Source of the DNA: Scyliorhinus canicula
Taxonomy: Eukaryota
Length of the DNA stretch: 64,000 bases
Assembly (NCBI RefSeq): GCF_902713615.1
Contig: NC_052162.1
Location: 130,348,653-130,412,652 of the forward strand
Direction: 5' to 3'
The position numbers were made by a program, and so were the translations under genes. Positions within the stretch are counted from its first letter, which is position 1; each line of letters begins with the position of its first letter. Positions 1 through 49,270 of the stretch are shown in pieces. The notes beneath the pieces were generated by a model. The model was not told the DNA's origin, searched no databases, and saw only the letters and a program-made list of their open reading frames with translations.

Positions 1-339
1 GATGAAAGACCTTTTAAATGCCCGGACTGTGGAAAGTGCTATAAAGGTTCTGGTCAACTGATGTGCCATCAACGTGTTCATACTGGGGAGAGGCCGTTCA
101 GGTGCTCTCATTGTGGGATTGGGTTCAGGGAATCATCACATCTCACTGTACACCAGCGCACTCACACTGGGGAGAGGCCGTTCACCTGCTCAGTGTGTGG
201 GAAGCGATTCAATCATGCATGCACCCTTCGGAGACACCAGCAAGTTCACACTGGGGAGAGGCCGTTCACCTGCACTGAGTGTGGGAAAAGATTCGGTCGC
301 TCATCCACTCTGCTGAGACACCAGAGAGTTCACAAATAA
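1..339 (+). CDS. C2H2 zinc-finger protein, 3' end (last 4 fingers; 5' part outside window), type A subfamily
   Basis: Frame 1 open from base 1: [38 protein letters not shown]...HQRVHK*; TGERPF linkers; AATAAA at 673-678 in a 3'UTR context shared with paralogues. Confidence 0.9.
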
Positions 340-456
340 CTGCAGTGATTGGATTTTGCTGTGAATCACAGCCTGGACAGAACCGTTTTCAATGGTGTCT
401 ACATTTACTCATGTCAAAGTCCAGCCCAATTATGGTGGTTAATATTCTGCATAAAT

Positions 457-652
457 CCTGCTGCCTCACGGCACCGAGGTCCCAGGTTCGATCCCGGCTC
501 TGGGTCACTGTCTGCGTGGAGTTTGCACATTCTCCCTGTGTTTACGTGGGTTTCGTCCCACAACCAAAAGATGGATAGGTGGATTGGCCAGGCTAAATTG
601 CCCCTTAATTGGAAAAAATGAATTGGGTACTCTAAATTTTTAAAGAAAAAAA
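457..652 (+). mobile_element. 5'-truncated A-tailed V-SINE (HE1-related) in the ZNF 3'UTR
   Basis: B-box GGTTCGATCCC, V-domain, A-rich tail, 16-bp TSD AATATTCTGCATAAAT (441-456 / 653-668). Confidence 0.9.
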
Positions 653-734
653 AATATTCTGCATAAATGTCAAATAAATCAGTTTTGTGTTAATACAGTG
701 TTTCAATGCTTTTTAATATCTTTTAACAAGTTGG

Positions 735-1040
735 TACCTTTTGAAATGCTCGCCCTCTCCCCTCCAGCAAGTGTGAGGAGCTCGTGGAGCTTTTTTGTCA
801 CTGCGAGAAAATCCGATCCGCTAGCTCCCTCTCTTCCACATGTGCACCCGACCAAACTATCTCTCAAGTTGCCCCAGCCCTGAAATCGCATCTTTCGCTC
901 CTCCCCCCCCCCCCCCCCCCCCCCCCCCATGTATCCTCACGCTTCCAGAGCTCACCATGTCCATGAGACCCACTTGCTCCCTCGATCCTATTCCCACTAA
1001 ACTGCTGATCACCTAACTTGGCCATGTTCACCGATATTGT
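735..1040 (+). mobile_element. L2 LINE ORF2 relic
   Basis: Encodes TCSLDPIPTKLLIT, a typical L2 pre-RT motif. Confidence 0.6.
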
Positions 1041-1074
1041 TTGTGGTTCTTTCTCCTCAGACACCGGGAACAAA

Positions 1075-1700
1075 AAAACATAGGAGCAGGAGATGTTCAC
1101 TTGGCCCCACCGAGCCTGCTCCACCAGTCAATAAGATCTTGACTGATCTGACCCCCAACTCTGCTTTCCTGGGTGCCCCATAACCCCGGTCGATCAAATT
1201 CAGCCTTGAATATTTTTAAAACACAGCCTCCACTGCTCTTTAGGGCAGAAAATTCCAAAGACTAGTGACTCTGCAAGGGAAGAAATTCCTCTTCAATGGG
1301 ACTGTATTTATTTTGAAACTGTTTCCCCCATGTTCTTGATTTCCCCCAAGAGGGGAAACACCCTCTCAGTACCCATCCTGTCAAGCACCTTCAGAATCCT
1401 GTACGTTTCAATGAGATCGCGGGCTGGAATCTTCGGTCCCGCAGCTGCATATTTCTCGGAGACACGTCGTTTTTGACCAGAGGGATTCTATCTTCCCGCT
1501 GGTTATCAATGGGATTTCCCATTGAAGCCATCGGGAAATCCGTGGACATGGGAGCGCTGCCGGCGGGAACAGGGAATCCCAACAGCCGGAGAATTCTCCA
1601 ATCAGGCAAGCCCGATCTGCTCAACCATTCCTCGCAAGACAACCCCTATTATCCCAGCAATCAGTCCATTGAACCTTGTCTGAACTGTTTCTAATGCGAA
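1075..1700 (-). mobile_element. CR1 (HER1-like) LINE 3' relic, interrupted by a short GC-rich MITE (~1420-1598)
   Basis: Similar to the CR1 3' ends at 15850-16180 and 57030-57480. Confidence 0.65.
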
Positions 1701-2403
1701 TAGGAGCATAGAAATGGGAGTAGACCATTCAGCCCACAGTCTGTTCCATCATTCAATTTAACCCATAGAATCCATACAGTGAGGAGGCCATTCGGCCCAT
1801 CGGGCCTGCACTGACCGTCTGAAAGATCACCCTACCCAGACGCATTCCCTTGCCCTATTCCCAGAACTCCATCCAATCTGCACATCTTTGGACAGTGGGA
1901 GGAAACCACATCAACAGGGGGAGAATGTGCAAACTCCGCACAGTCACCCAAGGCCAGAATTGAACCTAGGTCCCTGGCGCTGTGAGGCAGCAGTGCTAAC
2001 CACTGTGCTGCCCCTTACTCTGCCTGTAACGGACCCACATTTGTCTGAGCCAAACATTTCCTTATCACATACCTAGAGAAACTTTTACACTCATTTTTAA
2101 AAATATTTTTACATTCATATTTTGATCAATTTGGTGCCTTGATCGATGTAAATGCACCCCTAATTACTTACACAACCGTCTCACACTGTCTTAGTCAGAA
2201 ATGCATGACATATTTACGATGTTTCAGGGTGGCACTGCTGCCTTACATTGCCGAGGATCCGGGTTCGATCAGAGCCCCGGGTCATCGTCCGTGTGGAGTT
2301 TGCAACTTCTCCCAGTGTCTGCATGGGTCTCACCCCCACAACCCAAAAATGTGTAGGGTAGGTGGGTTGGCCACCCTGAATTACCACTTAATTTGCAATG
2401 TTT

Positions 2404-2712
2404 CATAGAATAATAGAATTTACAGTGCAGAAGAAGGCCATTCGGCCCATCGAGTCAGCACCGGCTCTTGAAAAGAGGACCCTACTTCAGCCCACACCTC
2501 CACCCTATCCTGTAACCCAGCAACCCAACCTAACCTAAGGGCAATATAACATGGCCAACCCACCTAGCCTGCACATCTTTGAAATGTGGGAGGAAACCGG
2601 AGCACCCGGAGGAAACCCACGCTGGCACGGGAAGAACGTGCAGACTCCGCACAGTGACATAAGCCGGGAATTGAACCTGGGACTTTGGAGCTGTGAATCA
2701 ACTGTGCTACCC
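2404..2712 (-). mobile_element. HE1 V-SINE with CR1-derived tail (degenerate SINE copies also at ~1765-2012 and ~2232-2395)
   Basis: V-domain plus tail GACTCGATGGGCCGAATGGCC..CTGCACTGTAAATTCTA. Confidence 0.85.
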
Positions 2713-2963
2713 TCATATATCCCTTTATTTGATATTATACAATCAAATATTCAGATAATTTTAAATGTTGAGGCTTATCAGAGTTTGAAGGTCTCTCTTG
2801 CCGGTACGTTTATCTTCATTCTTTACCAACACAACAATTAGATTTTACATTTTCATAGCAAATACAACTTGGTCTTTTGCAATAACTACCGATTCATGAA
2901 TTGTAACTCAATTAAGGCTCACGACATATCCAATCATTTATTACTGACTGCTGGCTAATTATT

Positions 2964-3243
2964 ACGGTAGCACAGTGGTTAGCACTGTTGCTTCACAATG
3001 CCAGGGTCCCAAGTTCGATTCGTGGCTTGGATCACTGTGTGGCATTCGCACTTTCTCCCCGTGTCTGCGTGGGTTTCCTCCCACAAGTCCCTAAAACCTG
3101 CTTGTTAGGTGAACTGGACATTCTGAATTCTCTCTGTGTATCCAAACAGGCGCTGGAGTGTGTGCCGGCTAGGGGATTTTCACAGTAACTTCATTGCAGT
3201 GTTAATGTAAGTCTACTTGTGACAATAATAAAGATTATTATTA
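2964..3243 (+). mobile_element. V-SINE with Rex1-like hairpin tail
   Basis: tRNA-like head, V-domain, tail TTTTCACAGTAACTTCATTGCAGTGTTAATGTAAGTCTACTTGTGACAATAATAAAG(ATT)n. Confidence 0.8.
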
Positions 3244-3670
3244 CTAAAAAATCATCTGCAGCATTACTGTTTTATAATACAAGATCAATATATAGTCAAT
3301 AAAAATGCATTACAGAATGTGGAAAAGCTGCAAGAAGCCACATGTTTGAATTTAAAATGACTCCCTTGACCTTGCTATTTATAACAGTGAATACGGTCTG
3401 ATTGTGATTGATTTCAAAAATTAATTTGATTACCCATGTCTGTAGTTTCCAGCATTACAACTGTAATAACACTTTCAAAGTATTTTGTTGGCAGTAAAAC
3501 ACTTGAAGAGGTCCTGTGGTCCTGAGAGGTAACATATAATGCCCTTTTTTCTAGTTGTTCACAAATTTGGATATAGACCTGATCAAAATCATTGGTAAAG
3601 ATTAAATTTTAATTTTGTATTATAACCAGATCTTTGACAGCATTTTAAATATGTGAAAACCCAAACACAT

Positions 3671-4135
3671 GCGCCGGGATTCTCCGAGCCTGCGGCAGGT
3701 CGGAGAATCGCCAGGGGCGCACGAGATTCCCGCCACACCGCTGGGCATCCGATTCTCCGGTGACCGGACAATCGGCGCCAATCGCGCCCGCGCGGTCAGG
3801 GGCCGCTGAAATAGGCTCCCACGGCAATTCTCTGCGGGCGACGGGCTGAACTCCCGCCGGCGTGTTTCAAACCTGGTACCACCCGGCGGGAGCTCAGACC
3901 CGCAGCCGTGATCTGAAGGGAGTCAACCACCTTCCGTGCGGGCCCACTTTAGGTCCCCGACATGTTGCTCCGCGCCGGCGCGGAGGCAGCCGTTGCATGC
4001 ATGTGCGGATCCATGCAGTGCTGCCTTTCGGCGGCAGTGCAGCGCGCAGCACTCCAGCGGCATGCTAGCCCCCTAAAAAACGGACAATTGCTGGGCCAGG
4101 AGGCCCATTGTCGCCAGCATACACCACTCCAGTGA
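3671..4135. mobile_element. GC-rich non-autonomous DNA transposon fragment (PIF/Harbinger-like MITE)
   Basis: Begins GCGCCGGGATTCTCCGAGCC..GGTCGGAGAATC, same terminal motif family as the MITEs at 37464 and 38237. Confidence 0.55.
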
Positions 4136-4719
4136 TATCCAGATTTATTTGTTTTAAAACACTGTGCGTTTATGTGTTTTGGAATTCACTGCTTGAAAAT
4201 GGTGTGAGAAACAGATTTGATTCTATCCTTCAAGAGAGAACTGGGCATTTGAAAGGGAAAGAAAACTGCAGGTCAACTGGATTAATGGGGATGTTTTTTG
4301 AAGAGTCAGCATGGGAATAATAGGCCCAATGGCCTCCTTCTGTGCTGTATGGACCGCCTGGGCATTTAAAAGGAGTGGTAATAGCCAGCAATCCACATCC
4401 TCCGAGTTTGGTAAAAGCAGAGATGATGGAATTATTTCAAAAAGAGATTGGCTGGATACTTGTGGGAAATAAACTAGTAATGTCGGCATGGATCGGGGCA
4501 ATGGAACTAACTGGATTGCTTAACAGAGCTAGCAAGCAATCAATGGGTCAAATGGCCCCATTCCCTATCATAATGATTCTATTATCCAAAGGGAACAATT
4601 ACAGCCGCTCCAGTCTCTCCAATTAAGTCCCTTCTCCCTGGTGCCATTCTCATAAATCTCCTTCGCACCCTCTCTGAGAATTTCACATCTTTCTTAAAGT
4701 GCGGGGCCCATATATAGGG

Positions 4720-5160: not shown

Positions 5161-5167
5161 AGGAATT

Positions 5168-6224: not shown

Positions 6225-7097
6225 TCATACACTCAGAATAGGTGATGCCCTCTCTCCGCTGTGAATTGACCGGTGTGTCAGCAATTTGTATGAATTACTG
6301 AACCCCTTGCCACACTCGGAGCAGGTGAACGGCCTCTCCCCAGAATGGACTTGCTGGTGTCTTCGCAAGGTGGATGAATGTCCAAATCTCTTCCCACAGT
6401 CACAGCAAATGAACGGCCTTTCCCCAGTGTGAACGCGCTGGTGCGTCAGCAGGTTGGACGAATCACTGAATCCCTTCCCACAGTTAGAGCAGGTGAATGG
6501 CCTCTCCCCTGTGTGAACTCGCTGGTGTCTCAACAGATCAGATAACTGAGTGAATCCCTTCCCACACTCAGAACAGGTGAACGGCCTCTCCCCGGTGTGA
6601 ACTCGCTGGTGTGTCTGCAGGGCGGATGAATGAATGAATCCCTTCCCACACTCAGAGCAGGTAAAAGGCCTCTCACCAGTTTGAACTCGCTGGTGCCTCA
6701 GCAGACTGGATAACTGAGTGAATCCCTTCCCGCACTCGGAGCAGACGAATGGCCTCTCCCCGGTGTGAACTCGCCGGTGCGTCTGCAGGTTGGACAACTG
6801 CGAGAATCCCTTCCCGCACTCAGAGCAGGTGAATGGCCTCTCCTTGGTGTGAACTTGCTGGTGTCTCAGCAGGGCCGACGAACAAATGAACCGCTTCCCA
6901 CAGTCTGAACAGGTGAACGGTTTCTCTCCGGTGTGGCCTTGCCGGTGTGACTGCAGGTTGGACAGGTGTGTGAACGCTTTCCCGCACTCCGAGCAGGTGA
7001 ACGGCCTCTCGCCGGTGTGACTACGGTGATGTGTTCGGAGTGCAGACGGGGACTGGAATCCCTTCCCACAGTACCCGCATTTCCATGGCTCCTTCAT
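6225..7097 (-). CDS. C2H2 zinc-finger protein, 290 aa, 10 fingers (finger 5 has H->Q), type B
   Basis: ATG at 7097 (MKEPWKC); in-frame TGA 39 nt upstream; coding-exon acceptor TTTTACAG|G with exon starting 7455; frameshifted 11th finger overlapping and following the stop. Confidence 0.9.
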
Positions 7098-9089
7098 AGT
7101 GCGGGTGACCTTGTGCCTCTCCAGTTTCAATGATCAATTGAAGACTCCTCCAGGCACAGAACAGGCAGACAGTTTCCACAGACTGTGAATGGTCTCATAT
7201 GTTTGCTGTAATTGATTACAGCTTTCTCCACAGTCAGTGCACTGAAACTCGCTCACGTGAGTTTGTGCGTGTGTCTCTCGGTGCTTTTCCAGTCACACTG
7301 AAGTTGAAAACCTTGTGAAGCAGCTGGAACAGACAAACGTTTCTCCTCATTGCTTCATGACCTCTATTCACATCGTGAGGAATCGAGTGACTCTTGTCGA
7401 CCCAGATGTGACGATTGTTTTGTGATTTGTCTGCAAATCCTCCCCTTCTAATATCCTGTAAAATGAGTTTGCGAAAATCATCAGTCAGTACAGGTTAAAA
7501 ATTCAGAACAGACAATTCTAGTTATTTTGTGGAACCTGTTTGTATTGTGTGAAATATTTTAAGACCAATTATCCCGTCTATTCAAACACTGTTTGTCTCT
7601 CAATACAATGATTCATTTATGTTCATTTTACTTTGATTGTTACAGTAAGTTTTAAAAAGGTGAAACATTGGCCTTCGGTTTATTGGAGTTGCCTGGGAAT
7701 TTGTTCGTTTTCAGCTTATTGGTCTCCACGGGATTTGTAACAACATCCCTAGTGCTGCACATATCCGATCCATAATGAAGCTCATTAAGTATTTCTTGTC
7801 TTGACATAGTACTGAGGATTGTACTCCAGAATTGCTGCATCTTTTTCCCAACCTGACCATGTTAAAATTGCCCCTTAGTGTCCAACGGTTAGATGCGGCT
7901 GCGGGGACAGGTTGGGGCCTAGGTTCAGGTGCCCTTCCAGAGGGTCAGTGCAGACTCGATGAGCCGAATGGCCTCCTTCTGCACTGTAGGGATTCTATGA
8001 TCTATGTTGAGATTTGGGCCACTTGCTTTATTGCTCATCCGTAATTGTCCTTGAGAAGACATAGTCAGCTGACGTCTTGAACCGCTGCAGTCCATATCAT
8101 AGAATTTACATACAGGCCATTCGTCCCATCAAGTCAGCACCCAACATAAGCCCACGCCTCCACCCTATCCCCATAAACCCAGTGACCCAACCTAACCTTT
8201 TTGGACACTAAGGGCAATTTATCATGTCCAATCCACCTAACCTGCACATCTTTGGACGGTGGGAGAAAACCCATGCAGATATGGGGAGAACGTACAAACT
8301 CCGCACAGTCACCCAAGGCCAGAATTGAACCCGGGTCCCTGGTGCTGTGAGGCAGCAGTTCTCACCACTGTGCCACCCATATGATGTTGGTACACCCACA
8401 GTGCTTTTGGGGAAGGATTTGCAGCTTTCTCAACAGTGCTGAAGCTCAGTTTGGGCTCCTCCACAGCTACTCAGCCCCTAAACCCATTACAGACTGTGAG
8501 TCCGAACATGGAAGAAAGAGCTCAACCCAAGGCGGCCCAGCTGCAGCATTCTAATGTGAAACTACTCAACTAATGTGAATGAAGTTTGGGTGGCACAGTG
8601 GTTAGCACTGCTGCCTCACCGATCCAGGTTCAATCCCGGCCTTCATAAGGATTCTATGAACCCTATCTAAATTGAAGTCAATGGGATTGAGGGAGAAAAC
8701 TCTTAACTGGTTCCATCACACCTCCCAAAGGTAAGATGATTGTGGTTGTTGGAGGTCAGTCATCTCAGTTCCAGGATATCGTTGCAGTAGTTCCCCAGGG
8801 TACTGTGCTGGGCCCCCAATCATTTCCAATATTATTCCATGAACACGGTGTGGGTCGTGGGGGGGGGGAAAGAGATGTTCACTGATGATTGTACAAAGTT
8901 CAGCACTATTCATGACTCCTCACTGAGGCAGTCCATGTCCATTTGCAAGACATGGACAATATTCAGGTTTGGGATGATAAGTGATCATAGAATCTCTACA
9001 GTGCACAATGAGGCCATTTGGCCCATCGACCATCTGAAAGAGCACTCTGCCAAGGTCCACTCCCCTGCCCAAACCCCATGCATTGATCA

Positions 9090-10129: not shown

Positions 10130-10570
10130 CCAATGGCTGCGCGTGCGCACTGCAGCACATGGGCCTGGGTGAAGACAGCGAGAGCGCATGCGCGCAGCCG
10201 CATTTTGCCCGCAACAAAGATGGCGGGAGATAATCCGGGCCTTCAACCGGAGAAGAAGCGAAACTGCGGCACACCTATTGCAAATGGGATGCCCATGGCT
10301 TCTTGTTCGCAGTACCGGGCGTATACCGATTTTTAGTGTGTGTGTGTCCCAGAACAACTGTCGTTGCCCGCTCACGTGCGGTCCTTGAATCTGAAGCGCT
10401 GCGCATCTGCAGCCAACCTCACGCCACCGACTCCGCGCGAGTGATTGACGGCAGCTTTGGACCAATGGGGAAAGGGGGCGGGGCTAGAGGACCGAGCGGG
10501 AGCCGCTGGTCCTCCAACCAATCGGAGTGAATGAGGGGCGGGGCTGACCCCGGATCACCCTCATTGGCTG
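10130..10570. promoter_or_regulatory. CpG-island promoter, probably of the minus-strand ZNF at 6225-7455
   Basis: NRF1 motif GCGCATGCGC 10184-10193, YY1 core AAGATGGCG 10217-10225, CCAAT boxes and GGGGCGGGG boxes 10461-10570. Confidence 0.75.
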
Positions 10571-15084: not shown

Positions 15085-16182
15085 TGGACTTGTTCGATAC
15101 GGCACCGTACAAAAGGCTACTTAATAAGATAAGGGCCCATGGTGTTGGGGTATTATATTACGATTGGCTTTTTGATAGAAGACAGGGACTTGCGATAAGG
15201 GGAGCATTTTCAGTCTGGCAACCTGAGTCCCACAGAGATCCATGCTGTGGCCACAGTTATTTACAATATAAATTAATGACTTGTCAAGGGAAGTGAATGC
15301 ATATTGCCAAGTTTGCAGATGTCACAAAAATAGGTGGGAAGGCAAATGATGAAGATGACACAGAGTCTACAGAGGGACACAGACATGTTAAGTGAGTTGG
15401 CAAAAACTTGGTAGATGGAATACAATGCAGAAATTTTTGAAGTTTTGCACTTTGGTGGGAAGAATAAATGAGCTGAATTTTATTTAAATGGAGACAGACG
15501 GCAGAAAGCTGCAGCTCAGAGTGATTTGGGGCTCCTGGTGCATAAATCACAAAAAGCAAGCGTGCAGGTTCAGCAGGTAATTGGGAAGGAAAATGGGATG
15601 TTGGCCTTTATTTCAAAGTGATTGGAGTTTAAATATAGGGAAGTCCTCAGAAAACTGTGCACGGCACCAGTTAGAACACATCTGGAATACTGTGAACAGT
15701 TTTGGTCCCCTTATCTAAGAAAAGACATACTGGCATTGGAGGCGGTCTGGAGAAGGTTCACCAGATTGATTCCGGGTAGGGAGGGATTTTCTTATGAGGA
15801 GAGGTTGAGTAGGTTGGGGCCTGTCCTCATTGGAGTTTAGAAGAATGAGAGGCGGCCTTATTGAGACAGACAGGATTCTCAGGGGGCTCGACAGGCTCGA
15901 TGCTGAGAGGATGTTTCCTCTTGTGGGAGAGTCTAGGACCAGAGGGCAGAATCTCAGTTACAGAGATGATTCTGTGGAATTCTTTACCGCAGAGAGCTGT
16001 CGGGGCTAGCTCGTTAAGTATGTTCAAAACTGAGACAGACAGATTTTTAATCAGTGAAGAAATCAAGGGTTATGAGGATAAGGCGGGAAAGTGGAGTTGA
16101 GGATTATAACATGATCTCATTGAATAGCAGAGCAGACTCGATGGGCCGAATGGCCTACTTCTGCTCCTACATTTATGGTCTC
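15085..16182 (+). mobile_element. CR1 LINE RT C-terminus and 3' end
   Basis: KFADVTKIGG, VRTHLEYCEQFWSPYLRKD, WNSLPQRAV; 3' tail GCAGACTCGATGGGCCGAATGGCCT. Confidence 0.85.
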
Positions 16183-16184
16183 AA

Positions 16185-16896
<712 letters not shown>

Positions 16897-17635
16897 CTAT
16901 GAAAAAAAGGGTCACAAAGGTCATCACTAAGTCCTTTCCTTCTTTTCTCATCCCACATCTCTTGGCTAGGAGACAAATCAAGTGCTTACATCCGTTTTCA
17001 CAACTATCTTTCCTCAAACTGGTTACAGGCCTGTCGCCAGAGGCTACAGCTTGCGGGGCACCACTCACATCGAGCATGACCGGCCAGGATACTTCCCCAC
17101 TGTAAGAGGTAGCAAATTTAAAACAAATTTGAGGAGAAACTACTTCTCCCAAAGGGTTGCGAATCTGTGGAATTCGCTACCCCAGAGTGCGGTGGATGCA
17201 GGGAAGTGAGTAACTTTAAGGAGTTTGACAGATTTTTAATTGGTAACGGGTTGAAGGGTTATGGAGAACGGGCAGGACGGTGGAATTGAGGCCAGGGTGG
17301 GAACAGCCATGATCACATTGAGGGTGTTAGGCTTGAGAGGCTAAATTGCCCACTCCTGCTCCTAGGTCATGTGTTCTCGGGAGGAGATACTCTGGTTGAT
17401 TTCACAATCCAGCTCTTGGCCTGTAACATTGTAGGCAGTAGTTGAGGAACATATCAGCCATGATAGAATGTTGGAGCAAACTCGATGGGCCGAATGGCCT
17501 AATTTTGCTCCTATATCTTATGACGTTATGATATGGTGGGGAAGTGGAATTGAGGATTGTATCAGATAAGACGTGACCTCATTGAATGGCAGAGCCGAGT
17601 GGCCTACTTCTGCTCCTACGTTTGATGGTCAATGG

Positions 17636-18498
17636 CAGGGTTTTTCGAAGTGCAGGCCATGACCCGCGGGTGGGTTACAAGTGCGAGTCTGGGGGAGGCG
17701 GTGGAACAATTGGTCGCAGTGTTTCTGCAGTGATCCCAATCGCGGGAGAAGCGCCCAACGGCAGCTACCGGCATTTAAATGAAAATGGTTGTGTGCAGTC
17801 GTTTGGCCATAAGCGACAGCAATGAGCAGGTCAGTGCGCTGTGCATGAACGCTGGAGAGAGCTGCTCAGCAGAATCCATGGCAGAACAGATCAGTGCTAT
17901 TGTTAGCTCTGGACAGAGTCTCTGGTGAACAGCCAACAAAGAAGAAACTTCAATCGGGGAAAAAAAGCAGGATAAAGATGATTCTTGAGGTATGGTTTTG
18001 TTAATTGTGTCAATGCAAATCATGATGCAAAGCCCAGGTGTGTTATATACAGGAAAGTGCTGGCGAATGATGGGAGAATTTTAAGATTTTGAAAGAGAAG
18101 TGGTGGGTGAAAAATTCCGTTTGAGATTGAGACCCTAGCGTCAACTGATGACTGTCTCCAAATGAAAAGACTGAGCTGCTTCACCTGTCTTGCAACAGCA
18201 CAATGAAAACACGCAGCATCTTCCAGGAGCATCCAGTGCTGAGTGAAACAAGCATTTTGTTGCTGTGGCCCTTCACATCGACCTACATCCGCGAGGTGGA
18301 TTTTCCATTCTCATGTCGATGAAGACGGCACAAAGGAACTGGCTGAATTCTGCAATGATAGTGCCTCAGTGCCCTCTGCCCCAGCTTGCAGTGAGATCAT
18401 TCGGACCAAGCAAGCTCCCCTTTTGCATGTGTCGGAAAAGTTGGCCCGCGGGGGTCGTGGAGGTTGGCCGGTTGATGAAAGTGGTTTGGAAAACTCTG
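17636..18498 (+). mobile_element. Internally deleted hAT (Charlie/Buster-type) transposon
   Basis: TIRs CAGGGTTTTTCGAAG / GTTTGGAAAACTCTG; transposase C-terminal PFTSTYIREV/GFSILMSMKTAQRNWLN (frameshifted). Confidence 0.7.
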
Positions 18499-18534
18499 GG
18501 CTCTGGCCATCCCCTGTTCACAATGTTCGGCTCC

Positions 18535-19100
18535 TTGATGGCAGTTCCGGAACAACAGGGAAGGCGGCTGGAGGACCGAGCAAGGGGGCGGCTGGAGGAC
18601 CGAGCAAGGGGGCGGCTGGAGGACCGAGCAAGGGGGCGGCTGGAGGACCGAGCAAGGGGGCGGCTGGAGGACCGAGCAAGGGGGCGGCTGGAGGACCGAG
18701 CAAGGATGCAGCTGGTCCTCCAACCAATCCGACTGAATGGAAGGCGGGGCTGATCCCCTCCCCCCCCGAAGCCCGGATGAGTTGCGCATGCGCTTTGCTG
18801 CACATTGCCCCCCGACAAGATGGCGGCCGTGAAGTACGGTCTGTAATCAGGAGGAGCCGCATCAGGTGGGTAAACTGCGGGGATCGACGTTCAGTGGGTT
18901 GGGCTCCATGGTGGGGTGCTTAAGAGGTCTTTCCACCTTCCCATTGCATCCATTAATCCCAGCCCACAACCGCGCCGGCTCGCGGAAGAGACGAACAAAG
19001 CGCCTGCGCATCACCCGCTCTCTCGTTGCGGCGTCTGCGCATGCCGCTCAGCGTCGGCGGGGCTGCGGAAGCGGCGCCTGCGCACTGAATTCACCGCTGC
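18535..19100 (+). promoter_or_regulatory. CpG-island promoter and putative non-coding first exon of the ZNF at 20692
   Basis: CCAAT, GC box, NRF1 18784-18793, YY1 CAAGATGGCGGC 18816-18827, donor CAG|GTGGGT at 18865/6; additional GCGCCTGCGCA motifs ~19000 and ~19074. Confidence 0.8.
18563..18705. repeat. 24-bp minisatellite, 6 copies (GGCGGCTGGAGGACCGAGCAAGGG)
   Basis: Direct reading; five identical units plus a 23-nt last unit. Confidence 0.95.
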
Positions 19101-19207
19101 GAGGCATGCTGGGTGCAAATCCCGCCACTGAAGAGGGCACGTGGCTTTTTAAGGTTTCCTTTGCTGTACCAGGGTGCAGCCTGGTGAGCTGGATTATCAA
19201 TGAAATC

Positions 19208-19710
19208 ACTGAACCCCTGCAGTGCAGAAGGAGGCCATTCGGCCCTTCCGGTCTGCACCAACTCACTGATAGAGCACCCTACCCTTGCTCCCACCCTTTT
19301 CCCGACAACTCTGTAACCCCATCCCCAGACATTAAGGGGCAATTTTAGCATTGCCAATCCACCTATCCTGCACGTCTGGACTGTAGGAGGAAACCGGAGC
19401 ACCCGGAGGAAACCCACACAGACGCAGAGAGAAGGTGCAAACTCCATACACAGTCACCAACGGTCAGAATTCATGGCGCCGATGTCCCTGGTACGATCCC
19501 GGCTCTGTGGGTCACTGTCCGGGTGCAGTTTGCACATTCTCCCCGTGTTTGCGTGGGTTTCGTCCCCACAACATAAAGATGTGTAAGGTAGGTGGATTGA
19601 ACACGCTAAATTGCCCCTTAATTAGAAAAAATTAATTTAAAAAAAGAATTGAACCCAGATCCCTGGCGCTGTGAGGCAGCAATGCTTTAACCACTGTGCC
19701 ACCATGCCGA
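19208..19710 (-). mobile_element. HE1 V-SINE with a nested plus-strand A-tailed SINE (~19472-19645)
   Basis: Host sequence resumes after the A-tail; AGAATT duplicated. Confidence 0.8.
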
Positions 19711-20691
19711 CCAGTTTTCGTCCAAGGGTATTGGAGTAGCAATGAACAAAGACAGGACTACAGAGTCAGAACAGCATTATATTCTTTCTCCCTGTAACAT
19801 GCCTTAGAATTTGCTTTATCAACCAGATCATAAATCTCAGGGTAATTAGCATTTTAAATAATTCCTAAAGGAAAGTAGAGGCTGTGATTATCCAGGAATG
19901 TTCTGTCTTTTACATTATCTCCTACCCAAGGTGGCAGGAAACCAATTACTGTTACAATTTTGTTGTTGCCGCTATCCCAGACATTATTCTCTGGATTTAG
20001 TGGAGTTGGATGGTTAAAAACTGTAGGGCCATGTTTATTTGAATTTCCTGAATATTGTGGTCCCCACAGACTTCAATACCTTATCCCCAGTGTTAGTAAA
20101 ATTGTTTGGTGGTGCCTGTCCGATATCTATGAGCGTGTGTGCTTGCATGCGTATGTGTCTGTGGAGACAATGTGTGTATCTCCTTCATCTTAAGCACTGC
20201 TTAATATCTCATACATTCATTAGCTCAATGTAAAAGTCCTCCCTGGTTAATGGATCTTTGGGAGTTCCTCAGGAGTTGGGGTTAGCTCTCCAGCTCTTCA
20301 AAATAGACACAAATGACCCAGACTTCGGTGTGCGGGGACAATTTTGAAATTTGTGGATAGAGTCTTATGTAGGTCTAGACTGGGTGGCAGATTCCCTTCT
20401 CGCAAGGACATTAATGAACCAGTTGGGTTTTTATGACAATCCAGCAGTTTTCAGGATCACATTTTCCCAGTGCCGGCTCCACAACTGACCAGATTCATTC
20501 AGCTCAATTTCACAATCTGCCTTTGTGTTTTTGTGGGTTCTCTCTCACTCACTTTTTTCTGTTTGAAATCAATTTCAGAGGGCATTAGAAGGGGAGGATT
20601 TTCCATTGGGGGAACTGAAAACCAAACATCACATCGGGATCTGGCAGAGTTGCCAATTTATCGCAATCTGAACATCGTCAGGTTTTTGAAC

Positions 20692-21813
20692 ATGGAAGAA
20701 AAAGGCTCCGTTCAGAGTGAGGAGAAACCGTACACGTGTTTTGTGTGTGGACGAGACTTCAGCGGATCTTCTGATCTGTTGAAACATAAGTGCAATCACA
20801 GCAGGGAGAAGCCGTGGAAATGCGGGGATTGTGGGAAGGGATTTAAATCCCCGTCTGACCTGGAAACGCACCGGCGCAGTCACACCGGGGAGAAACCATT
20901 CACTTGCTTCCGGTGTGGGAAGGGATTCACTCGTTCATCCTACCTGCTGATACACCAGCGACTTCACACCGGGGAGAGGCCGTTCACCTGCTCCAAGTGT
21001 GGGAAGAGGTTCATTCAGTCATCCAACCTGCTGACCCACCAGCGAATTCACACCGAGGAGAGGCCTTTCAAATGCCCAGACTGCGGGAAGTGTTATAAAG
21101 GTTCCATGGAACTGATGCGCCATCGACGTGTTCACACCGATGAGAGACCGTTCAGGTGCTCTCACTGTGGGATCGGGTTCAGGTGGTCATCTCAACTCAC
21201 TGCGCACAAGCACAGCCACACGGGGGAGAGGCCGTACACTTGCTCTGAGTGTGGGAAGGCATTCACTCAGTCATCCCACTTGCTGAGACACCAGCATGGT
21301 CACAGCGATGAGAGGCCGTTCACCTGCTCCATGTGTGGGAAGGGATTCACTCAGCAATCCCATCTGCAGACACACCAGCGGGTTCACACCAATGAGACCC
21401 CTTTTAAATGCCTAGGTTGTGGAAAATGCTTCAAAGGATCCCAGGACCTGATGCTCCATCAACGCCTTCACCTTGCTGAGGGATCGTTCGGGTGCTCTCA
21501 ATGCGGGACTGGGTTCAGGAAGTCATCTCAACTCGATGCACACCAGGAAATTCACACTGGAGAGAGGCCGTTCACCTGTCCTGGGTGTGGGAAGGGATTC
21601 ACTCACCCATCCAACCTTCTGAGACACCAGCGGGTTCACACTGGGGAGAGGCCGTTCACCTGCTCGGAATGTGGGAGGGGATTTACTCAGTCATCCAACC
21701 TGCTGACACACCAGAGAGTTCACACTGGGGAGAGGCCGTTCACCTGCTCTGAATGTGGGAGGGGGTTTGCTTATTTATCTGTACTGCTGACGCACCAGCG
21801 AGTTCACAAGTAA
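20692..21813 (+). CDS. C2H2 zinc-finger protein, 373 aa, 13 fingers, type A
   Basis: [19 protein letters not shown]; acceptor ~20578/20580; ends HK*; AATAAA 21929-21934. Confidence 0.92.
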
Positions 21814-22384
21814 CTACAATGATTGACTTTTGCCGCTAATCACGTTCAAGAATAAACCATGTTAATTGGGGACTGTTTCTGCTGATAAACTGAAGCCCTG
21901 TTGTGCTAATATCATGGATTAAAGGTCAAATAAATCAGCTTTGTGTTGAACGCACAGTGTTGCATCTTTTTAACCCCCAGCCCATCTCTAACCACCCTTT
22001 CCTCTCCAAAAATCCTTGTCATCTCCCAAACTTCTGCCCATTTGCCCTGGAACTCCATGTTTGAATCGCTCCAATGAAATACATTGCATAGTATTGAAAC
22101 AGCTCTGCCAAAATTGCTAATTAGATCCGATATGAATATTGTTACGACGCTCTGGGCTAGTGCACGGTCAATTCCAGCCCCACTTGACCCTGAGCAAAAC
22201 AATTGAAATTAACAAATAATTCTCTGAAAAATACCCAAAGACTTTGGCCTTTGGCAGCCCAATCACTAGTCACCAGATTTGTAGATTTAAACACAATTAA
22301 TTTTATTAATGACAATAACTATAATTGAATATTCTGTAAATAGAACTGGTTAACTATTATCAAATTCCTGACCCCCTCATTAAA

Positions 22385-29600: not shown

Positions 29601-30212
29601 AATGGAGCTATTAAAAAGGATCAACGCACTGTATTTAAAATAAAGCTGATTTATTAGATGTTTGATCACAATATTAATTCCTAAAACTGGGCTCGAGTTT
29701 ATTAACATCAGCAGAAACCGACCCCAATGAGACCTTGATGTGGTTAATGAAAATGAAATGAAATGAAAATCGCTTATTGTCACAAGTCGACTTCAAATGA
29801 AGTTACTGTGAAAAGCCCCTAGTCGCCACATTCCGGCGCCTGTTCAGGGAGGCTGGTACGGGAATTGAACTGTGCTGCTGGCCTGCCCTGGTCTGCTTTC
29901 AAAGCCAGCCCTGTGCTAAACCAGCACCAAAATCCCATCACTGCAGTTACTTGTGAATGCGCTGTGTCTCGGCAAATACTTTCCCACATTCAGCGCAGGT
30001 GAATGGCGTCGCCCCACAATGAACTGGCTGGTGTACAGTGAATTGAGATAATTTCCTGAACTGAGTCCCTCAGTGAAAGCACGTGAATGATCTCTTATCA
30101 GTGTGAACATGAGCAAAGGTTCTCAGGCCCTATTACAGCACTTCCCAAAGCCTGGCATTCAAAAGCTCTCCGAGTATGAACCTCCTGATGTGGCAGCAGT
30201 GTGATAAAGCAA

Positions 30213-30869
30213 CTAATCCTTTCCAACACCCAGAGCAGGTGAATGCCCGCTCCCAGTGTGAACCCGTTGGTGTGCCAACAGGTTGGAAAACTGAGTGAAT
30301 CCCTTCCCACACTCTGCGCAGGTGAACGGCCTCTCCCCATTGTGAACCCGCTGGTGTGTCAGCAGGTTAGATGACTGAGTGAATCCCTTCCCACACTCTG
30401 CGCAGGTGAACGGCTTCTCCCCAGTGTGAACCCGCTGGTGTCTCAGTAGGTGGGATGAGGTAGTGAATCCCTTCCCACACTCGGAGCAGGTGAACGGCCT
30501 CCCCCCGGTGTGAACTCGCTGGTGGACAGTGAGTTGAGATGATTGCCTGAACCCAGTCCCGCAGTGGGAGCACCTGAACGGTCTCTCGTCGGTGTGAACG
30601 CGCTGGTGTCTCAGAAGGTGGGATGACTGCGTGAATCCTTCCCCACAGGTCGAGCAGGCGAAAGGCCTCTCCCCAGTGTGTCTGCGATGATGCGTTTCCA
30701 GCTTCGACGGGGAAATGAATATCTTCCCGCAGTCCTCACATTTCCACGGCTTCTCCCTGCTGTGAGTGCTCGCGTGTCTCGACAGGCCATTTGAACGGCT
30801 GAAACCTCGCCCGCACTCAGAACACGTGTATGGTTTCTTTCCACTGTGAGCGGAATCTTTTCCCTCCAT
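30213..30869 (-). CDS. C2H2 zinc-finger protein, 218 aa, 7 fingers, type A, with a frameshift-shortened C-terminus
   Basis: ATG 30869 ([16 protein letters not shown]); acceptor TTTCACAG|G with exon starting 30991; about 4 decayed fingers and the ancestral HK* stop downstream (~29947). Confidence 0.85.
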
Positions 30870-31409
30870 CTTCACAATCCGACGATAAATTGTCGATAAA
30901 TTACGATTACGATAAATTGAGCGCCTCCATCAAATCCTGATGCCACCTTTGGTTTCAATTTCACGATTGCAAATCCTTCCCTGCTAATAGCCTGTGAAAT
31001 TTATTTAAAACAGAAAAAAAAGGAATAACATCAAAAACACAAAGGCAGGTTGTGAAATTGAGCTGAATGATTCTGGCCATTTGTGGGACCGGAACGTGGA
31101 AAAAGGTGACCATTAAAACTGCTGGATTGCCATAAAAACCCAACTTGTTCACCAATGTCCTTCAGGGAAGGGAACCTGTCTCCCGGACTGGGCCTACACA
31201 AGACACTGGTGTCTATGAGAGGAGAGAGAGAGAAGAGGGGATGATTGTGAGAGGCAGGATGTGAAGGTGAGGGCTTTTATATATGTCTACAACTCAAATT
31301 TGACAGAAACTCTTCAACTCTCAACCTCTGCCACCTGGAAGATCTAGGGCAGTGTGTGAGACTCCTTCCTCTCCCAAGTTCCCTCCAACTCACACAGCGG
31401 CCTGACTTA

Positions 31410-41358: not shown

Positions 41359-41955
41359 CCGTGGCCCACCATGTCTATGCTGACAATCAAATACCAATCA
41401 ATACTTATCCCTTTTACCACCACTTGGTATAGGGTCATAGAGTTGGAAAGGTTCTCTTAACTCTTTTAGGGAGCTTGTTGTTAAAAGTAATTTGTTTGAA
41501 TCACATGTTGGGGGAAACAAGAGAAGGCATGATATCCCATAGAAACTAGAATCGCCTGTTCTGAATTTCTATCCTGGATTGAAAATGTGATACTGACGCT
41601 GTCAACTCCTTTTACAGGTATTAGATTAGGATTTGCCAAACTTTCTACAGATCTGTCCGAGTCATCAGGACCTGAATATCATCGGCCTTTAAAAGTGGAA
41701 GGAGAAATGTTTGTCTGTTCTGTTTGTGGGAAAAGATTTCAAACATCAGTGTGACTGGAAAAGCACCGAGACCCACACAACACACACCCGAGTGAGAGAG
41801 TTCCAGTGAACTGACTGTGAAAAAAGCTTAAACTAATTACATAGCCTGAAAAAACATCAGATCATTCACAGCAAGGAGAGAGAGTGCACATGTTCTGTGT
41901 GTGGACGAGGCTTCACTGATTATCCAACCTGGAGAGACACGAAGACCCCAGCACC

Positions 41956-42882
41956 ATGGAGAAGCCGTGGAAATGTGGGGACTGTGGGAAGGGATTCAGA
42001 ACACCGTCTGTGCTGGAAACGCATCGACGCAGTCACACCGGGGAGAGGCCGTTCGCCTGCTCTCAGTGTGGGAAGGGATTCACACAATCATCTAGCTTAC
42101 GTAAACACCAGACAACTCACACTGGGGTGAGACTCTTCACCTGTTCAGAATGTGGGAATGGGTTCACTCAACTAACGCACCTCACTGCACACCAACTTGT
42201 TCACTCAGACATGAGACCTTTTAAATGTTCCGACTGTGAAAAGAGCTTTAAAAGCAAGAAAAATCTATTGACACACCAGCGAGTTCACACTGGGGAGAGG
42301 CCGTTCACCTGCTCTCAGTGTGGGAAGAGATTCACTCAGTTATCCAGCCTGCTGACCCACCAGCGAGTTCACACCGGGGAGAAACCATTCACCTGCCCTG
42401 AGTGTGGGATGGCATTCATTCAGTTATGCAACCTTTTGGATCACCAGCGGGTTCACACTGGGGAGAGGCCATTCACCTGCTCTGTGTGTGGGAAGGGATT
42501 CGCTCAGTCATCCACCCTGCTGAGACACAAGCGCATTCACACTGGGGTGAAACCATTCACCTGCCTTGAGTGTGGGAAGGGATTCACTCAGTCTGCCCAC
42601 CTCGCTTCACACCAACGTGTTCACTCTGACACGAGACCTTTTACATGTTCCGACTGCGAGAAAAGCTTCAAAGGCAAAATGGATCTGCTGATTCACCAGC
42701 GCAGTCACACTGGAGAGAGGCCGTTCACCTGCTCCGTGTGTGGGAAGGGATTCACTCAGCAGTGTCTCCGGATGAAACACCAGCGCATTCACACCAGGGA
42801 GACATTATTCATCTGCTCCATTTGTGGGAAGGGATTCTCTCATTCATCCACCCTGCTGACACACCAGCGAGTTCACAAGTAA
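41956..42882 (+). CDS. C2H2 zinc-finger protein, 308 aa, 11 fingers, type B
   Basis: Strong Kozak CACCATGG, MEKPWKC...HK*; acceptor TTTTACAG|G with exon starting 41618; ATTAAA 43018-43023. Confidence 0.93.
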   Translation: MEKPWKCGDCGKGFRTPSVLETHRRSHTGERPFACSQCGKGFTQSSSLRKHQTTHTGVRLFTCSECGNGFTQLTHLTAHQLVHSDMRPFKCSDCEKSFKSKKNLLTHQRVHTGERPFTCSQCGKRFTQLSSLLTHQRVHTGEKPFTCPECGMAFIQLCNLLDHQRVHTGERPFTCSVCGKGFAQSSTLLRHKRIHTGVKPFTCLECGKGFTQSAHLASHQRVHSDTRPFTCSDCEKSFKGKMDLLIHQRSHTGERPFTCSVCGKGFTQQCLRMKHQRIHTRETLFICSICGKGFSHSSTLLTHQRVHK

Positions 42883-45811: not shown

Positions 45812-45955
45812 TCAGCTGTGATTGTAACACAGCAAAAAGCAGATGACTGGTCCCAGATTGGACAAATGGACAAGGAGAAGCAGGGTGATAGAAATTGACT
45901 TTTCTAGTCAGACATAAGAGGTTTAAATGAGAACTCATTAAGAATAATTAACTAT

Positions 45956-46075
45956 CCCCGTGTCTGCGTGGGTTTCGCCCCCACAACCCAAAAATGTGCA
46001 GAGTAGGTGGATTGGCCACGCTAAATTGCCCCTTAATTGGAAAAAATAATTGGCTAATCTAAATTTAAAAAGAAA
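45956..46075 (+). mobile_element. 5'-truncated A-tailed V-SINE
   Basis: 16-bp TSD AAGAATAATTAACTAT (45940-45955 / 46076-46091). Confidence 0.9.
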
Positions 46076-46698
46076 AAGAATAATTAACTATAATCATATC
46101 AACCATGAGAGTAAGGGAAGCCGAATAACTGGGAACATTTTGCAAGTTGCTTGAGACTGTTAAGAACAGTGACATCAACTAGCTAAAAGGCCCCATTGTT
46201 ATTCAGTAAGAACTGGTAGTTCCGTCTCTATGGAAACAGCCAGTCTAGACTTACTTCTGAACGAAAATTGGCAAGTGTTGGTATGGGAAAATTTGTACCA
46301 AGATATTTAAACAAATATATATTTTAAAATTGATAGACAGACAGTTTGGCCAAAAGTGATTTACAAATTAGTTAAAGCCAATCAGGGGTGAAAAGAAGGC
46401 GAGACCTTTAGATAATTATCTCCTTAAGAATCACTTACCCGGGATGGAAAACTCATTCCGGAATCACCCTATCTAAATTTCTGAAACCTATTTCTTTGCT
46501 GCTTGCGTTTGCTGTCGCCATCTTTCTTTTGTTTAAATCACTTATTTATGTTATTCTGTGTATTATGATTTGAAGAATTACCACGATCTGTATTTTAAAG
46601 CTCAACGACCGTATTCGCTAAAGACAATTAATCTGGCGAGCTTGCTAAAGGGCTAGTCGGAACTTTTTGAATGTTCCATTGAAAATAAAGTTACCAGA

Positions 46699-48455
46699 GA
46701 CTTCCGGTGGCGGCCATGGAGAGGAGTAGGTGGCACATTTGATAGCTCCCGCCTGTAATGGACTTTTGGACCTTTTCCCCTGGTTTTTTTCGGATTTTAT
46801 GGGATAAATCAGTGAAGAGTGAGACAGTGAGGAGAAATCCCCCTCTGGTGTATGGAGAATTGGACCAGAAGTGGCCGTGTGAGAAGACAAACTCCTATAA
46901 GGGAGACGCAATCAGAGCTGGTAACACGGGACAGCATGGCGGAGAGCAAGGGCTGCGAGGAGACGGCACAGTGGTCGACGGAGCAGCTGGTGAAGTTTTT
47001 CGAGGATTGCTTCGCCAAGCTGAAGAAGGACACGCTGGACCCGATTAAGGCTTTGATTGATCAAGTGGTTCAGAATCAGGAAACCCACGGGAGAGCGATC
47101 CAGGAGGTCGAACAAACATTGTCTGAGCACGAGGAATATATAACCGTGCTGGAAAGGTGGGGATGATGAACGACAGCCAGAAAAGAATGCAGGACAAGCT
47201 GGGGGACTTGGAAAATAGGTCCAGGAGGCAGAATCTCAGAATTGTTGGCCTCCCTGAAGACAGTGAGGGATCGGATGCGAGGGCCTATGTGATAGACATG
47301 TTGGAGAGATTGATGGGGGCTGGGGCATTCCCTCGGCCCCTGGAATAGGACAGAGCACACAGAGGAAGCCCAGAACGAACGAGCCGTCTAGGGTCCTGGT
47401 GGTACTTTTTCACCGTTTCATGGACAAGGAACACGTTTTGCGATGGGCCCAAGAAAGAACGAAGCAGCAAGTGGGAGAACTGTGAGTTGCGCATCTGTCA
47501 GGACCTGGGAGCGGATTTGGCCAAGAGGCGAGCTGGGTTCAATCGGGCAAAACCGACCCTCTTTTTAAGAAGGGGATGAAGTTCGGGATGCTGTACCCAG
47601 CCCGCCTGTGGGTCACACATGAGGAACGGGACTTAGAACATAGAACATAGAACAGTACAGCACAGAACAGGCCCTTCGGCCCTCGATGTTGTGCCGAGCA
47701 ATGATCACCCTACTTAAACCCACGTAACCCGTAACCCAACAATCCCCCCCATTAACCTTACACTACGGGCAATTTAGCATGGCCAATCCACCTAACCTGC
47801 ACTTCTACTTTGAAATGCCAGACGAAGTACGGACCTTTATTGAAGAAATGAAGCTGGAGGCGAATTAAAAGACACTTATGCCTTGGAGAAGTTCTGTGGC
47901 AGCGATTTGTGGTGCTGGATTGTATAACTTTAAGTACCTCAATGTGAAATAATGGGCTGTGTGGATGGTTAAAGGTAGATCTGTCTTGCAGGGACCTTGT
48001 TAGAGGGGAGATGGGCTTTGAATTTAGTTCTGCTTTTTGGGTGACTATTTTTCTAAAGTGACTGTTCCTTCACTTTTTTCTGTTGTTTGTTTACTGGGGA
48101 ATGTGATGCATTTGTGAGGGGGAGAGAGGAGAGAACAATAGGGAGACAGACTGCTTGGTGCCAGGGACGGGAGCTATCAAGTCAGCATGGGTCAGCTGAC
48201 TCTCGGAAGTGAGGTGGGGGTGAGCAGGTGTTAAGCTGGAGCTTGACTTGGGGTATTGGGTTTCTAGTATTGTTGCTAGGGGGGTGGGGGAGTGGGGGGG
48301 GGGCTGCTTTGTTGTCGGGGGAGGAACTGTTACTAGGAGACAAATGGGAGGTCGGGAACGGCGACAGCCTGAGTGGGGACTTGAGGAAGCGGAGGGCGCG
48401 AGCTCAAGGCTGGCCTAAAAAGGGTGATAGCTAGTCGGCAGGGGGAGTGGGGGGG
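46699..48455 (+). mobile_element. L1/Tx1-clade LINE 5' half (5'UTR, degenerate ORF1 46936-~47868, inter-ORF region); ORF2 missing
   Basis: Start GACTTCCGGTGGCGGCCATG; ORF1 DLENRSRRQNLRIVGLPE..DRAHR..GMLYPARL; SINE fragment inside (~47635-47800). Confidence 0.85.
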
Positions 48456-49270
48456 TGTTGGAACGGTTTCTCCCCATTCTGAATTAACTGGTGCATCAGC
48501 AGATTGGGAAGCAGGTGAACGGCTTCTCCCCAGTGTGAACTCGCTAATGAGTCTCCAACTAAGAGGGGGATCTGAATGCCTTCCCACAGTCCCCACATTT
48601 CCAAGGTTTCTCCATGATGTGGGAGTTCATAACAATAATAGTCTTTATTATTGTCACAAGTAGGTTTACATGAACTCTGCAATGAAGTTACTGTGAGAAT
48701 CCCCCAGTCGCCACATTCCGGAGCCTGTCCGGGTCACAGAGGGAGAATTCAGAATGTCCAATTCACCCAACAGCACGTCTTTTGGGACTTGTGGGAGGAA
48801 ACCGGAGGAAACCCATGCAGACACGGGGAGAACATGCAGACTCTGCATAGACAGTGACCCAAGCCGGTGATCGAACCTGAGGCCCTGGCGCTGTGGAGAA
48901 ATAGTGCTAACCACTGTGCTGCCGTGCCGCTCTTGAGTTTCGATGATCTGTTGACGTCCCACCAACTGACAGAAAACATATGAGGTTTCTTCTCACTGAG
49001 AATGATCTGATAGTTTTTCAGGCTGTGTAACTGGTTCAAGCTCTTTCCACAGTCAGTTCACTGGAACACTGACTCTAATGTGCATCTGTCTTGGGGCTTA
49101 TCCAGTCGCACTGAAGTTTGAAATTTCTTGCACAGAGAGAACAAACATTTCTCCTTCCACATTTAAGGGATGATGATGATTTATCAGATCTGATCTGATA
49201 AATCAATGAAGATGTTGAGATAATTTTTGATTTACGCTTCCCGCTTGTTAATCCTCCCCTTCTAATTAGC
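48456..49270 (-). pseudogene. Type B zinc-finger pseudogene with a Rex1-tailed V-SINE inserted (~48632-48930)
   Basis: Acceptor TTTTAAG|G with exon starting 49270; ATG 48615 [25 protein letters not shown]; truncated at the L1 junction. Confidence 0.85.

What the first reader, a model, noticed from the sequence alone, without database searches (positions are those of the whole stretch)
1..49270. Effector-less ('naked') tandem zinc-finger cluster with an invariant N-terminal WKC/PS finger, a candidate KRAB-independent TE-recognition system in sharks
Seen: seven paralogues with the fingers in one exon and translation starting 0-15 aa before the first finger, leaving no room for KRAB, SCAN or BTB. 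All six genes with a visible N-terminus keep a finger PWKCxxCGKxFxxPSxL(E)TH(R)RxH as finger 1 or 2. The sequences are 7097 [15 protein letters not shown]; 16602 [15 protein letters not shown]; 20815 [15 protein letters not shown]; 30770 [15 protein letters not shown]; 41956 WKCGDC..RTPSVLETH; 48615 WKCGDC..RSPS*LETH. Downstream fingers vary in number and in helix residues. Known: canonical KRAB-ZNF/TRIM28 silencing is a sarcopterygian feature, and cyprinids use FiNZ-ZNFs. Inference: the Trp/Pro finger is a protein-interaction module standing in for an effector domain in a birth-and-death family embedded in TE-dense DNA.
Basis: partly seen in the sequence, partly recalled or inferred. Interest (0 to 1): 0.75.

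Follow-up and report, generated by a model that had tools for sequence, protein, structure and literature searches.

The report
Fingers-only shark zinc-finger gene cluster
This catshark-type region holds seven members, two of them dead, of a shark-and-skate gene family of about 1,900 copies whose proteins are nothing but DNA-binding zinc fingers. Every array starts with one hallmark finger that most likely reads DNA like the others and is not shown to replace a repressor domain.

Summary
The window carries seven C2H2 arrays. Four are open reading frames, one runs off the window's 5' end, and two are wrecks. All six visible N-termini have the PWKCxxCGK..PS..L..H finger.

Transcript contigs from three studies splice a short exon 1 (ends 18865) onto the finger exon (starts 20579). 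Exon 1 has a TAA in the finger frame, so gene 20692-21813 encodes fingers only. Pfam finds no KRAB, SCAN or BTB in the ORFs, and no KRAB anywhere in the genome.

There are two subtypes. Type A keeps the old ATG and has the WKC finger second. Type B has three fossil fingers in its leader and a new ATG in the linker, so the WKC finger is first.

The motif PWKCxDCGK occurs 1,901 times in the genome (control 0). It was found only in shark and skate proteins among 238 fetched.

The effector-surrogate idea is not supported. The finger's scaffold is strongly kept (pN/pS 0.18 against about 0.4). Its base-contact positions -1, +3 and +6 vary like those of other fingers, and its linkers are canonical. 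Gene 20692 has a basking-shark counterpart with the same contact residues, so it is old and stable.

The scan noted this family before on other DNA of this genome. I found no paper on it.

The parts
1..339 (+). Gene 1, 3' end of an array: 4 fingers, then K and a stop. Its WKC finger lies just upstream of the window.
6225..7097 (-). Gene 2, type B coding sequence. It starts MKEPWKC and has 9 intact fingers plus one with the second His changed to Gln.
7098..7455 (-). Gene 2 leader inside the finger exon. It holds fossil fingers with stops. The splice acceptor ttttacag ends at 7456.
10487..10551 (+). A second copy (85-86% identity) of the 68-nt CCAAT-containing promoter element.
15900..16896 (-). 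Gene 3, a type B wreck (MEKLWKC, with frameshifts and stops). It is still transcribed, and its exon starts at the family acceptor at 16896.
18185..18347 (-). Candidate 5' exon of gene 3 (CT..AC joint 16896->18185). It lies head-to-head with exon 1 of gene 4.
   Evidence: one run, side 26 nt
18563..18705 (.). A perfect 24-bp x 6 tandem repeat between the two divergent first exons.
18690..18757 (+). CCAAT-containing promoter element. At least 46 copies occur on ZNF-rich contigs, some as inverted pairs.
18805..18865 (+). Gene 4 exon 1, non-coding. GCGCATGCGC lies just upstream. It contains AAGATGGCGGC and an 8-codon uORF that ends at TAA 18844-46, in the finger frame. The 5' end is the start of the contigs, not a mapped transcription start.
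18866..20578 (+). Gene 4 intron 1 (GT..AG, 1,713 nt). It contains a very abundant repeat at about 19200-19700.
20579..20691 (+). Gene 4 5'UTR inside exon 2.
20692..21813 (+). Gene 4, type A coding sequence: 373 aa, 13 fingers. The WKC finger is finger 2 (20815-20883).
29800..30212 (-). Decayed distal fingers of gene 5, lying beyond a frameshift.
30213..30869 (-). Gene 5, type A coding sequence: 218 aa, 7 fingers, truncated by a frameshift. The WKC finger is finger 2.
30870..30991 (-). Gene 5 leader, with in-frame stops. The acceptor tttcacag ends at 30992.
41619..41955 (+). Gene 6 leader: three fossil fingers, two short uORFs, and the acceptor ttttacag ending at 41618.
41956..42882 (+). Gene 6, type B coding sequence: 308 aa, 11 fingers. 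The ATG is in ACCATGG context and the WKC finger is finger 1.
48535..49270 (-). Gene 7, a type B wreck. The WKC finger has two stops and the array is lost after finger 2. An acceptor-like match lies at 49250-49266.

Best explanation
The window is a slice of a very large poly-C2H2 zinc-finger family specific to sharks and skates. The genome holds about 1,900 WKC fingers.

**Gene plan.** A short non-coding first exon comes from a CCAAT/GC-rich promoter. It is spliced to one large exon that carries a leader, the ATG and nothing but fingers.

**Two derived N-termini.** Type A kept the ancestral ATG and lost the first two fingers in frame. Type B lost the ATG, let three fingers decay into a leader with uORFs, and starts at a Met in the linker just before the WKC finger.

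**How it most likely works.** The proteins are most likely sequence-specific DNA binders. The WKC finger is the retained N-terminal anchor finger of the array. It reads DNA, because its contact residues differ between subfamilies. Its unusual scaffold (W, K, P+1, E+5, HRRSH) has been kept since before the shark-skate split. How occupancy becomes regulation is inferred, not shown. It could be steric blocking or recruitment of an unknown partner.
For: - A GT..AG joint 18862->20576 appears in 3 runs of 3 studies. Exon 1 has TAA in the finger frame.
- Paralogues differ by non-3n indels between the acceptor and the ATG, and some have in-frame stops there.
- The type B leader consensus of 32 copies itself carries 3 stops and a frameshift.
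- 28 of the 30 type B loci fetched by leader DNA keep the linker Met, and the window's gene 6 has it in ACCATGG context.
- The ORFs hit only finger-type Pfam families. No KRAB was found in the genome.
- Other sharks' gene models start at MEGKS or MEKPWKC.
- Close paralogue pairs have pN/pS of 0.2-0.3.
- WKC scaffold pN/pS is 0.18 at pS 0.34, against 0.37-0.45 for other fingers. Contact pN is 0.41 against 0.48-0.62.
- Type B contact entropy is 1.69 bits against 1.7-2.2.
- PWKCxDCGK has 1,901 hits against 0 for the control.
- The WKC+PS finger occurs only in elasmobranch proteins among the 238 fetched.
- Gene 4 is 83% identical and colinear with basking-shark P0213.
Against: - Splicing was checked for one gene only, and the runs are RNA only by guess.
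- Alternative isoforms or C-terminal splicing were not excluded.
- DNA binding was not tested.
- Comparing fingers by their order in the array mixes non-orthologous fingers, which inflates divergence downstream of the WKC finger.
- The type A sample was picked by similarity to the WKC finger.
- In type A, positions -1 and +6 of the WKC finger are constant (S, T).
Confidence: 0.75

Rival explanations
1. The WKC/PS finger is a protein-docking module that stands in for KRAB, and the family is a KRAB-independent TE-silencing system.
For: - The scaffold is kept across types A and B and across sharks and a skate.
- The array lost its upstream fingers twice but always kept this finger.
- No KRAB was found in the genome.
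- The family is large and lies in TE-rich DNA.
- The conserved residues P+1, E+5 and R+8/R+9 are not the canonical base contacts.
Against: - Positions -1, +3 and +6 vary like those of a DNA-reading finger.
- The linkers on both sides are canonical.
- Other idiosyncratic fingers are also conserved.
- There is no significant rate difference in close pairs.
- Gene 4 keeps its contact residues between shark orders.
- No partner is known.
Confidence: 0.15
2. A hidden effector exists. Other isoforms splice a coding exon (N- or C-terminal) in frame, so the proteins are not naked.
For: - S. torazame model P0148 has a 220-aa acidic N-terminal extension read through the leader.
- Other notes of this scan report ZNF genes with a Myb-type tail elsewhere in this genome.
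Against: - Gene 4 exon 1 has an in-frame TAA.
- The leader has frame-breaking indels and stops among paralogues.
- The P0148 extension has no Pfam domain and maps to a single distant locus.
- No joints leave the array.
Confidence: 0.05
3. The family is mostly dead weight: segmentally duplicated, transcribed pseudogenes. On this view the conservation of the WKC finger only reflects young copies.
For: - Two of the seven are wrecks and one is truncated.
- The wreck gene 3 is still spliced.
- Type A copies differ by only about 5-10% even in the intron and UTR.
Against: - pN/pS is 0.2-0.3 in independent close pairs.
- Long open arrays persist at about 15% DNA divergence in type B.
- At pS 0.34 between types the scaffold pN is only 0.06.
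- Counterparts exist in Lamniformes, a sawshark and a skate.
Confidence: 0.1

Closest known systems
KRAB zinc-finger proteins (KZFPs) of sarcopterygians
   Same: Both are large, clustered, lineage-expanded poly-C2H2 families with all fingers in one 3' exon. Both show variable finger number and contact residues, pseudogene turnover and a TE-rich setting.
   Different: This family has no KRAB exon and its upstream exon is non-coding. No KRAB was found in the genome. Its hallmark is a finger, not an effector domain.
FiNZ-ZNFs of cyprinid fish (Wells et al. 2023, PMC10547256)
   Same: Both are independent, lineage-specific expansions of hundreds of ZNF genes with a two-exon plan, outside the KRAB system.
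   Different: FiNZ genes encode a 28-aa acidic N-terminal domain on their first exon. Here exon 1 encodes nothing.
Fingers-only Krueppel-type proteins. NCBI labels the nearest non-shark hits 'ZFP2-like', 'OZF-like' or 'gastrula zinc finger protein XlCGF'.
   Same: The proteins consist solely of tandem C2H2 fingers joined by TGEKP linkers.
   Different: Those hits lack the WKC..PS hallmark finger. They are not known as a family of about 1,900 copies with a shared leader and promoter.

Membership tests
Krueppel-type poly-C2H2 zinc-finger proteins | Tandem C2H2 fingers (PF00096) joined by TGEKP-type linkers | tested here: met
   PF00096 E 1e-49 to 1e-75, with 7-12 stretches per ORF.: finger map.
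KRAB-ZFP | An N-terminal KRAB domain (PF01352) encoded by upstream exon(s) | tested here: not met
   no KRAB in the ORFs.: the upstream exon is non-coding with an in-frame stop.: 0 matches in the whole genome. Caveat: KRAB is a short domain split over exons, and no positive control rang.
KRAB-ZFP | Recruitment of TRIM28/KAP1 | not testable with these tools
   Needs an interaction assay.
SCAN-ZNF / BTB-ZNF | An N-terminal SCAN (PF02023) or BTB domain | tested here: not met
   neither domain is in the ORFs.: SCAN-like hits are dispersed and none lies in the window. BTB was not searched genome-wide.
FiNZ-ZNF | A conserved 28-aa acidic N-terminal domain on its own coding exon | tested here: not met
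   exon 1 is non-coding. The type A N-terminus is 15 aa, itself a linker relic. No alignment to a FiNZ sequence was made.
Elasmobranch fingers-only 'WKC-finger' family (defined by this scan, no paper found) | A non-coding exon 1 plus a single coding exon, with the PWKCxxCGK..PS..L..H finger first or second and a shared leader and acceptor | tested here: met

The most novel reading that the evidence does not exclude
The non-DNA face of the WKC finger (W, K, P+1, E+5, R+8/R+9) has been kept since before the shark-skate split. It could be the docking site for a cartilaginous-fish corepressor. If so, these roughly 1,900 fingers-only genes would be a third, independently evolved vertebrate TE-silencing system, beside KRAB and FiNZ.
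Probability: 0.15. Interest if true: 0.75.

Novelty: new variant of a known kind. Interest (0 to 1): 0.5.

Why it matters
Cartilaginous fish lack KRAB-ZNFs, yet they have large, TE-rich genomes. A family of about 1,900 fingers-only ZNF genes with a fixed anchor finger is the obvious candidate for their sequence-specific genome surveillance or regulation. It offers a natural test of whether a poly-ZNF family can expand and function without any appended effector domain. The transcript evidence here and the split between a constant scaffold and variable contact residues make that question directly testable.

Tried and rejected
- **Whole-protein and N-terminal homologue searches.** Both were swamped by generic ZNFs, and only a handful of elasmobranch models were usable.
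- **Exact look-up of the four window ORFs.** None is in the collection.
- **Fetching 800 kb of flanks for an unbiased census.** Genome-wide pattern counts were used instead.
- **Exon 1 and promoter of gene 4.** Not repeated as a whole. Only a 68-nt CCAAT element recurs.
- **Rfam.** Nothing in the window.
- **N-terminal extensions of models P0148, P0184 and P0141.** No Pfam domain. The extension tested against the genome (P0148) maps to a single locus.
- **Complex prediction and structure prediction.** Not run. There is no candidate partner, and I make no binding claim.
- **Read laying.** Only one call is allowed, so splicing of type B genes could not be checked. One search shows only that 0.34-0.55 of gene 6's words occur in transcriptome-sized runs.
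Full report
**What is in the window**

A six-frame scan finds C2H2 arrays at seven places:

- 1-339 (+)
- 6225-7097 (-)
- about 15900-16602 (-)
- 20692-21813 (+)
- 30213-30869 (-)
- 41956-42882 (+)
- 48535-48615 (-)

All six N-termini inside the window carry the finger PWKCxxCGK..PS..L..H. The seventh gene has its copy about 320-440 nt before the window start.

Four arrays are open reading frames with 13, 7, 11 and 9+1 fingers. Pfam reports only finger-type families for them. Two are wrecks with stops and frameshifts. Gene 5 is cut short by a frameshift, with decayed fingers behind it. RT fragments confirm the TE-rich setting.

**Is there an effector exon?**

Both type A genes have a polypyrimidine tract and a CAG acceptor about 113-120 nt upstream of a good-context ATG.

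I laid contigs of four transcriptome-sized runs on 16000-21999. Three runs from three studies show a GT..AG joint. It ends exon 1 at 18865 and starts exon 2 at 20579, skipping 1,713 nt.

Exon 1 is GC-rich. GCGCATGCGC lies just upstream of it, and it contains AAGATGGCGGC. Its only ATG opens an 8-codon uORF. The TAA of that uORF (18844-46) lies in the finger reading frame. No upstream exon can therefore be fused in frame in this transcript.

Across 29 type A copies, the stretch from the acceptor to the ATG differs by 1-, 2- and 5-nt indels. In some copies it holds in-frame stops. It is therefore a 5'UTR.

Gene models of other sharks begin at MEGKS or at MEKPWKC. Pfam KRAB finds nothing in the whole genome. 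SCAN-like hits are dispersed and none lies in the window. 'Fingers only' is thus shown for gene 4 and well supported for the family. The runs are RNA by guess only, and other isoforms are not excluded.

**Two subtypes**

Type A covers genes 4 and 5. It reads MEG/EK..(V)HSGEKPYTC, then finger 1, then the WKC finger.

Type B covers genes 2, 3, 6 and 7. Here the Met of the linker T-M-E-K-P-W-K-C is the start. Upstream lie three fossil fingers.

The majority consensus of 32 genomic type B copies itself carries three stops and a frameshift. The decay therefore predates the amplification.

The homologue of the type A ATG is GTG in type B. In the window's gene 6 the new ATG sits in ACCATGG context behind two weak-context uORFs. 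28 of the 30 type B loci fetched by leader DNA keep this Met.

The type A N-terminus ('..VHSGEKPYTC') is itself a linker relic. It is consistent with an in-frame loss of fingers 1-2.

**Size and spread**

- PWKCxDCGK occurs 1,901 times in the 4.22-Gb genome, against 0 for the reversed control.
- CxDCGKx[FY]xxP occurs 2,459 times.
- Canonical HTGExPFxC linkers occur 19,199 times.

The family is therefore a major part of the ZNF repertoire, but not all of it.

Among the 238 fetched proteins, the combined WKC+PS finger appears only in elasmobranchs: Scyliorhinus torazame, Cetorhinus, Pristiophorus and Rhinoraja. Mustelus starts with MEKPWKC.

**How the WKC finger evolves**

Independent close paralogue pairs show pN/pS of 0.2-0.3 overall, so the genes are under purifying selection. 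In these pairs the WKC finger is not significantly slower than other fingers: 6 non-synonymous and 9 synonymous changes.

Between types A and B the picture differs. The finger's scaffold has pS 0.34 but pN 0.06, a ratio of 0.18. Other fingers give 0.37-0.45. Its contact positions have pN 0.41, close to the 0.48-0.62 of other fingers.

The type B sample was picked mainly by leader DNA. In it, -1 is Y/A/F/S/T, +3 is V/L/Q/E/A and +6 takes eight different residues. That is an entropy of 1.69 bits, against 1.7-2.2 downstream. In type A, -1 and +6 are fixed and only +3 varies, but that sample was chosen by similarity to this finger.

S at +2 is generic to all fingers of the family. The finger is flanked by canonical linkers. 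Another idiosyncratic finger type (xRCSxCGxGF) occurs in most type A genes and a rarer one (xKCxDCGKx[FY]K) in a few, at shifting ordinal positions. Finger gain and loss therefore happens downstream while the WKC finger stays first.

**Age**

Gene 4 aligns colinearly with basking-shark P0213 at 83% identity over 155 aa. Out-of-register alignments give 49-56%. The helix contact residues of fingers 2-5 are almost unchanged. This gene is old and has a stable specificity. That argues against an arms race for it.

**Reading**

The best-supported view is a shark-and-skate family of fingers-only DNA binders. Its N-terminal anchor finger reads DNA and has an unusually constrained scaffold.

The scaffold might additionally serve as a backbone clamp or a docking surface. 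That remains open. TE recognition is untested.

**Comparison and novelty**

The family works like KZFPs or FiNZ-ZNFs in genomic behaviour. It fails their defining feature, a coding N-terminal domain exon.

I found no paper that describes it. [quoted passage not shown]

The scan has already noted the family on other DNA of this genome. New here are:

- the splice evidence
- the type A and type B derivation
- the copy count
- the split between scaffold and contact residues
- the basking-shark counterpart

Noticed in passing
window 16896-18347 (-) and 18805-18865 (+): The dead gene 3 is still transcribed and spliced at the family acceptor (16896). Its alternative 5' exons lie at about 16990, 18185-18347 and 18943-19145. 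It therefore sits head-to-head with gene 4, with about 460 bp between the first exons.
   Followed up: partly
window 18563-18705: A perfect 24-bp x 6 tandem repeat (GGCGGCTGGAGGACCGAGCAAGGG) lies inside the divergent promoter, directly before the CCAAT element.
   Followed up: no
window 18690-18757 and 10487-10551: A 68-nt CCAAT-containing element recurs at 46 or more places on ZNF-rich contigs, at 81-92% identity. Some copies form inverted pairs about 300 bp apart. The rest of the promoter and exon 1 is not repeated.
   Followed up: partly
window 19200-19700: Contig depth is 5,000-73,000 in all four runs. This marks a very abundant transcribed repeat inside intron 1 of gene 4. There is no Rfam match.
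   Followed up: no
P0148 (Scyliorhinus torazame); own genome C17:102302376-102402474: A single-copy relative has YKC in place of WKC. Its gene model reads the leader in frame behind a 220-aa acidic Ser/Glu/Asp-rich N-terminus spread over about 100 kb. The extension has no Pfam domain. It could be an ancestral form or a chimeric model.
   Followed up: partly
window 56314-57003, 57919-58407, 62357-63256: Reverse-transcriptase fragments (PF00078) of retroelements lie beyond the ZNF cluster.
   Followed up: partly
own genome, e.g. C4:131685361-131844187: Other dense ZNF clusters have different linker codon usage (HTGEKPF[KTR]C) and appear not to belong to the WKC family.
   Followed up: no
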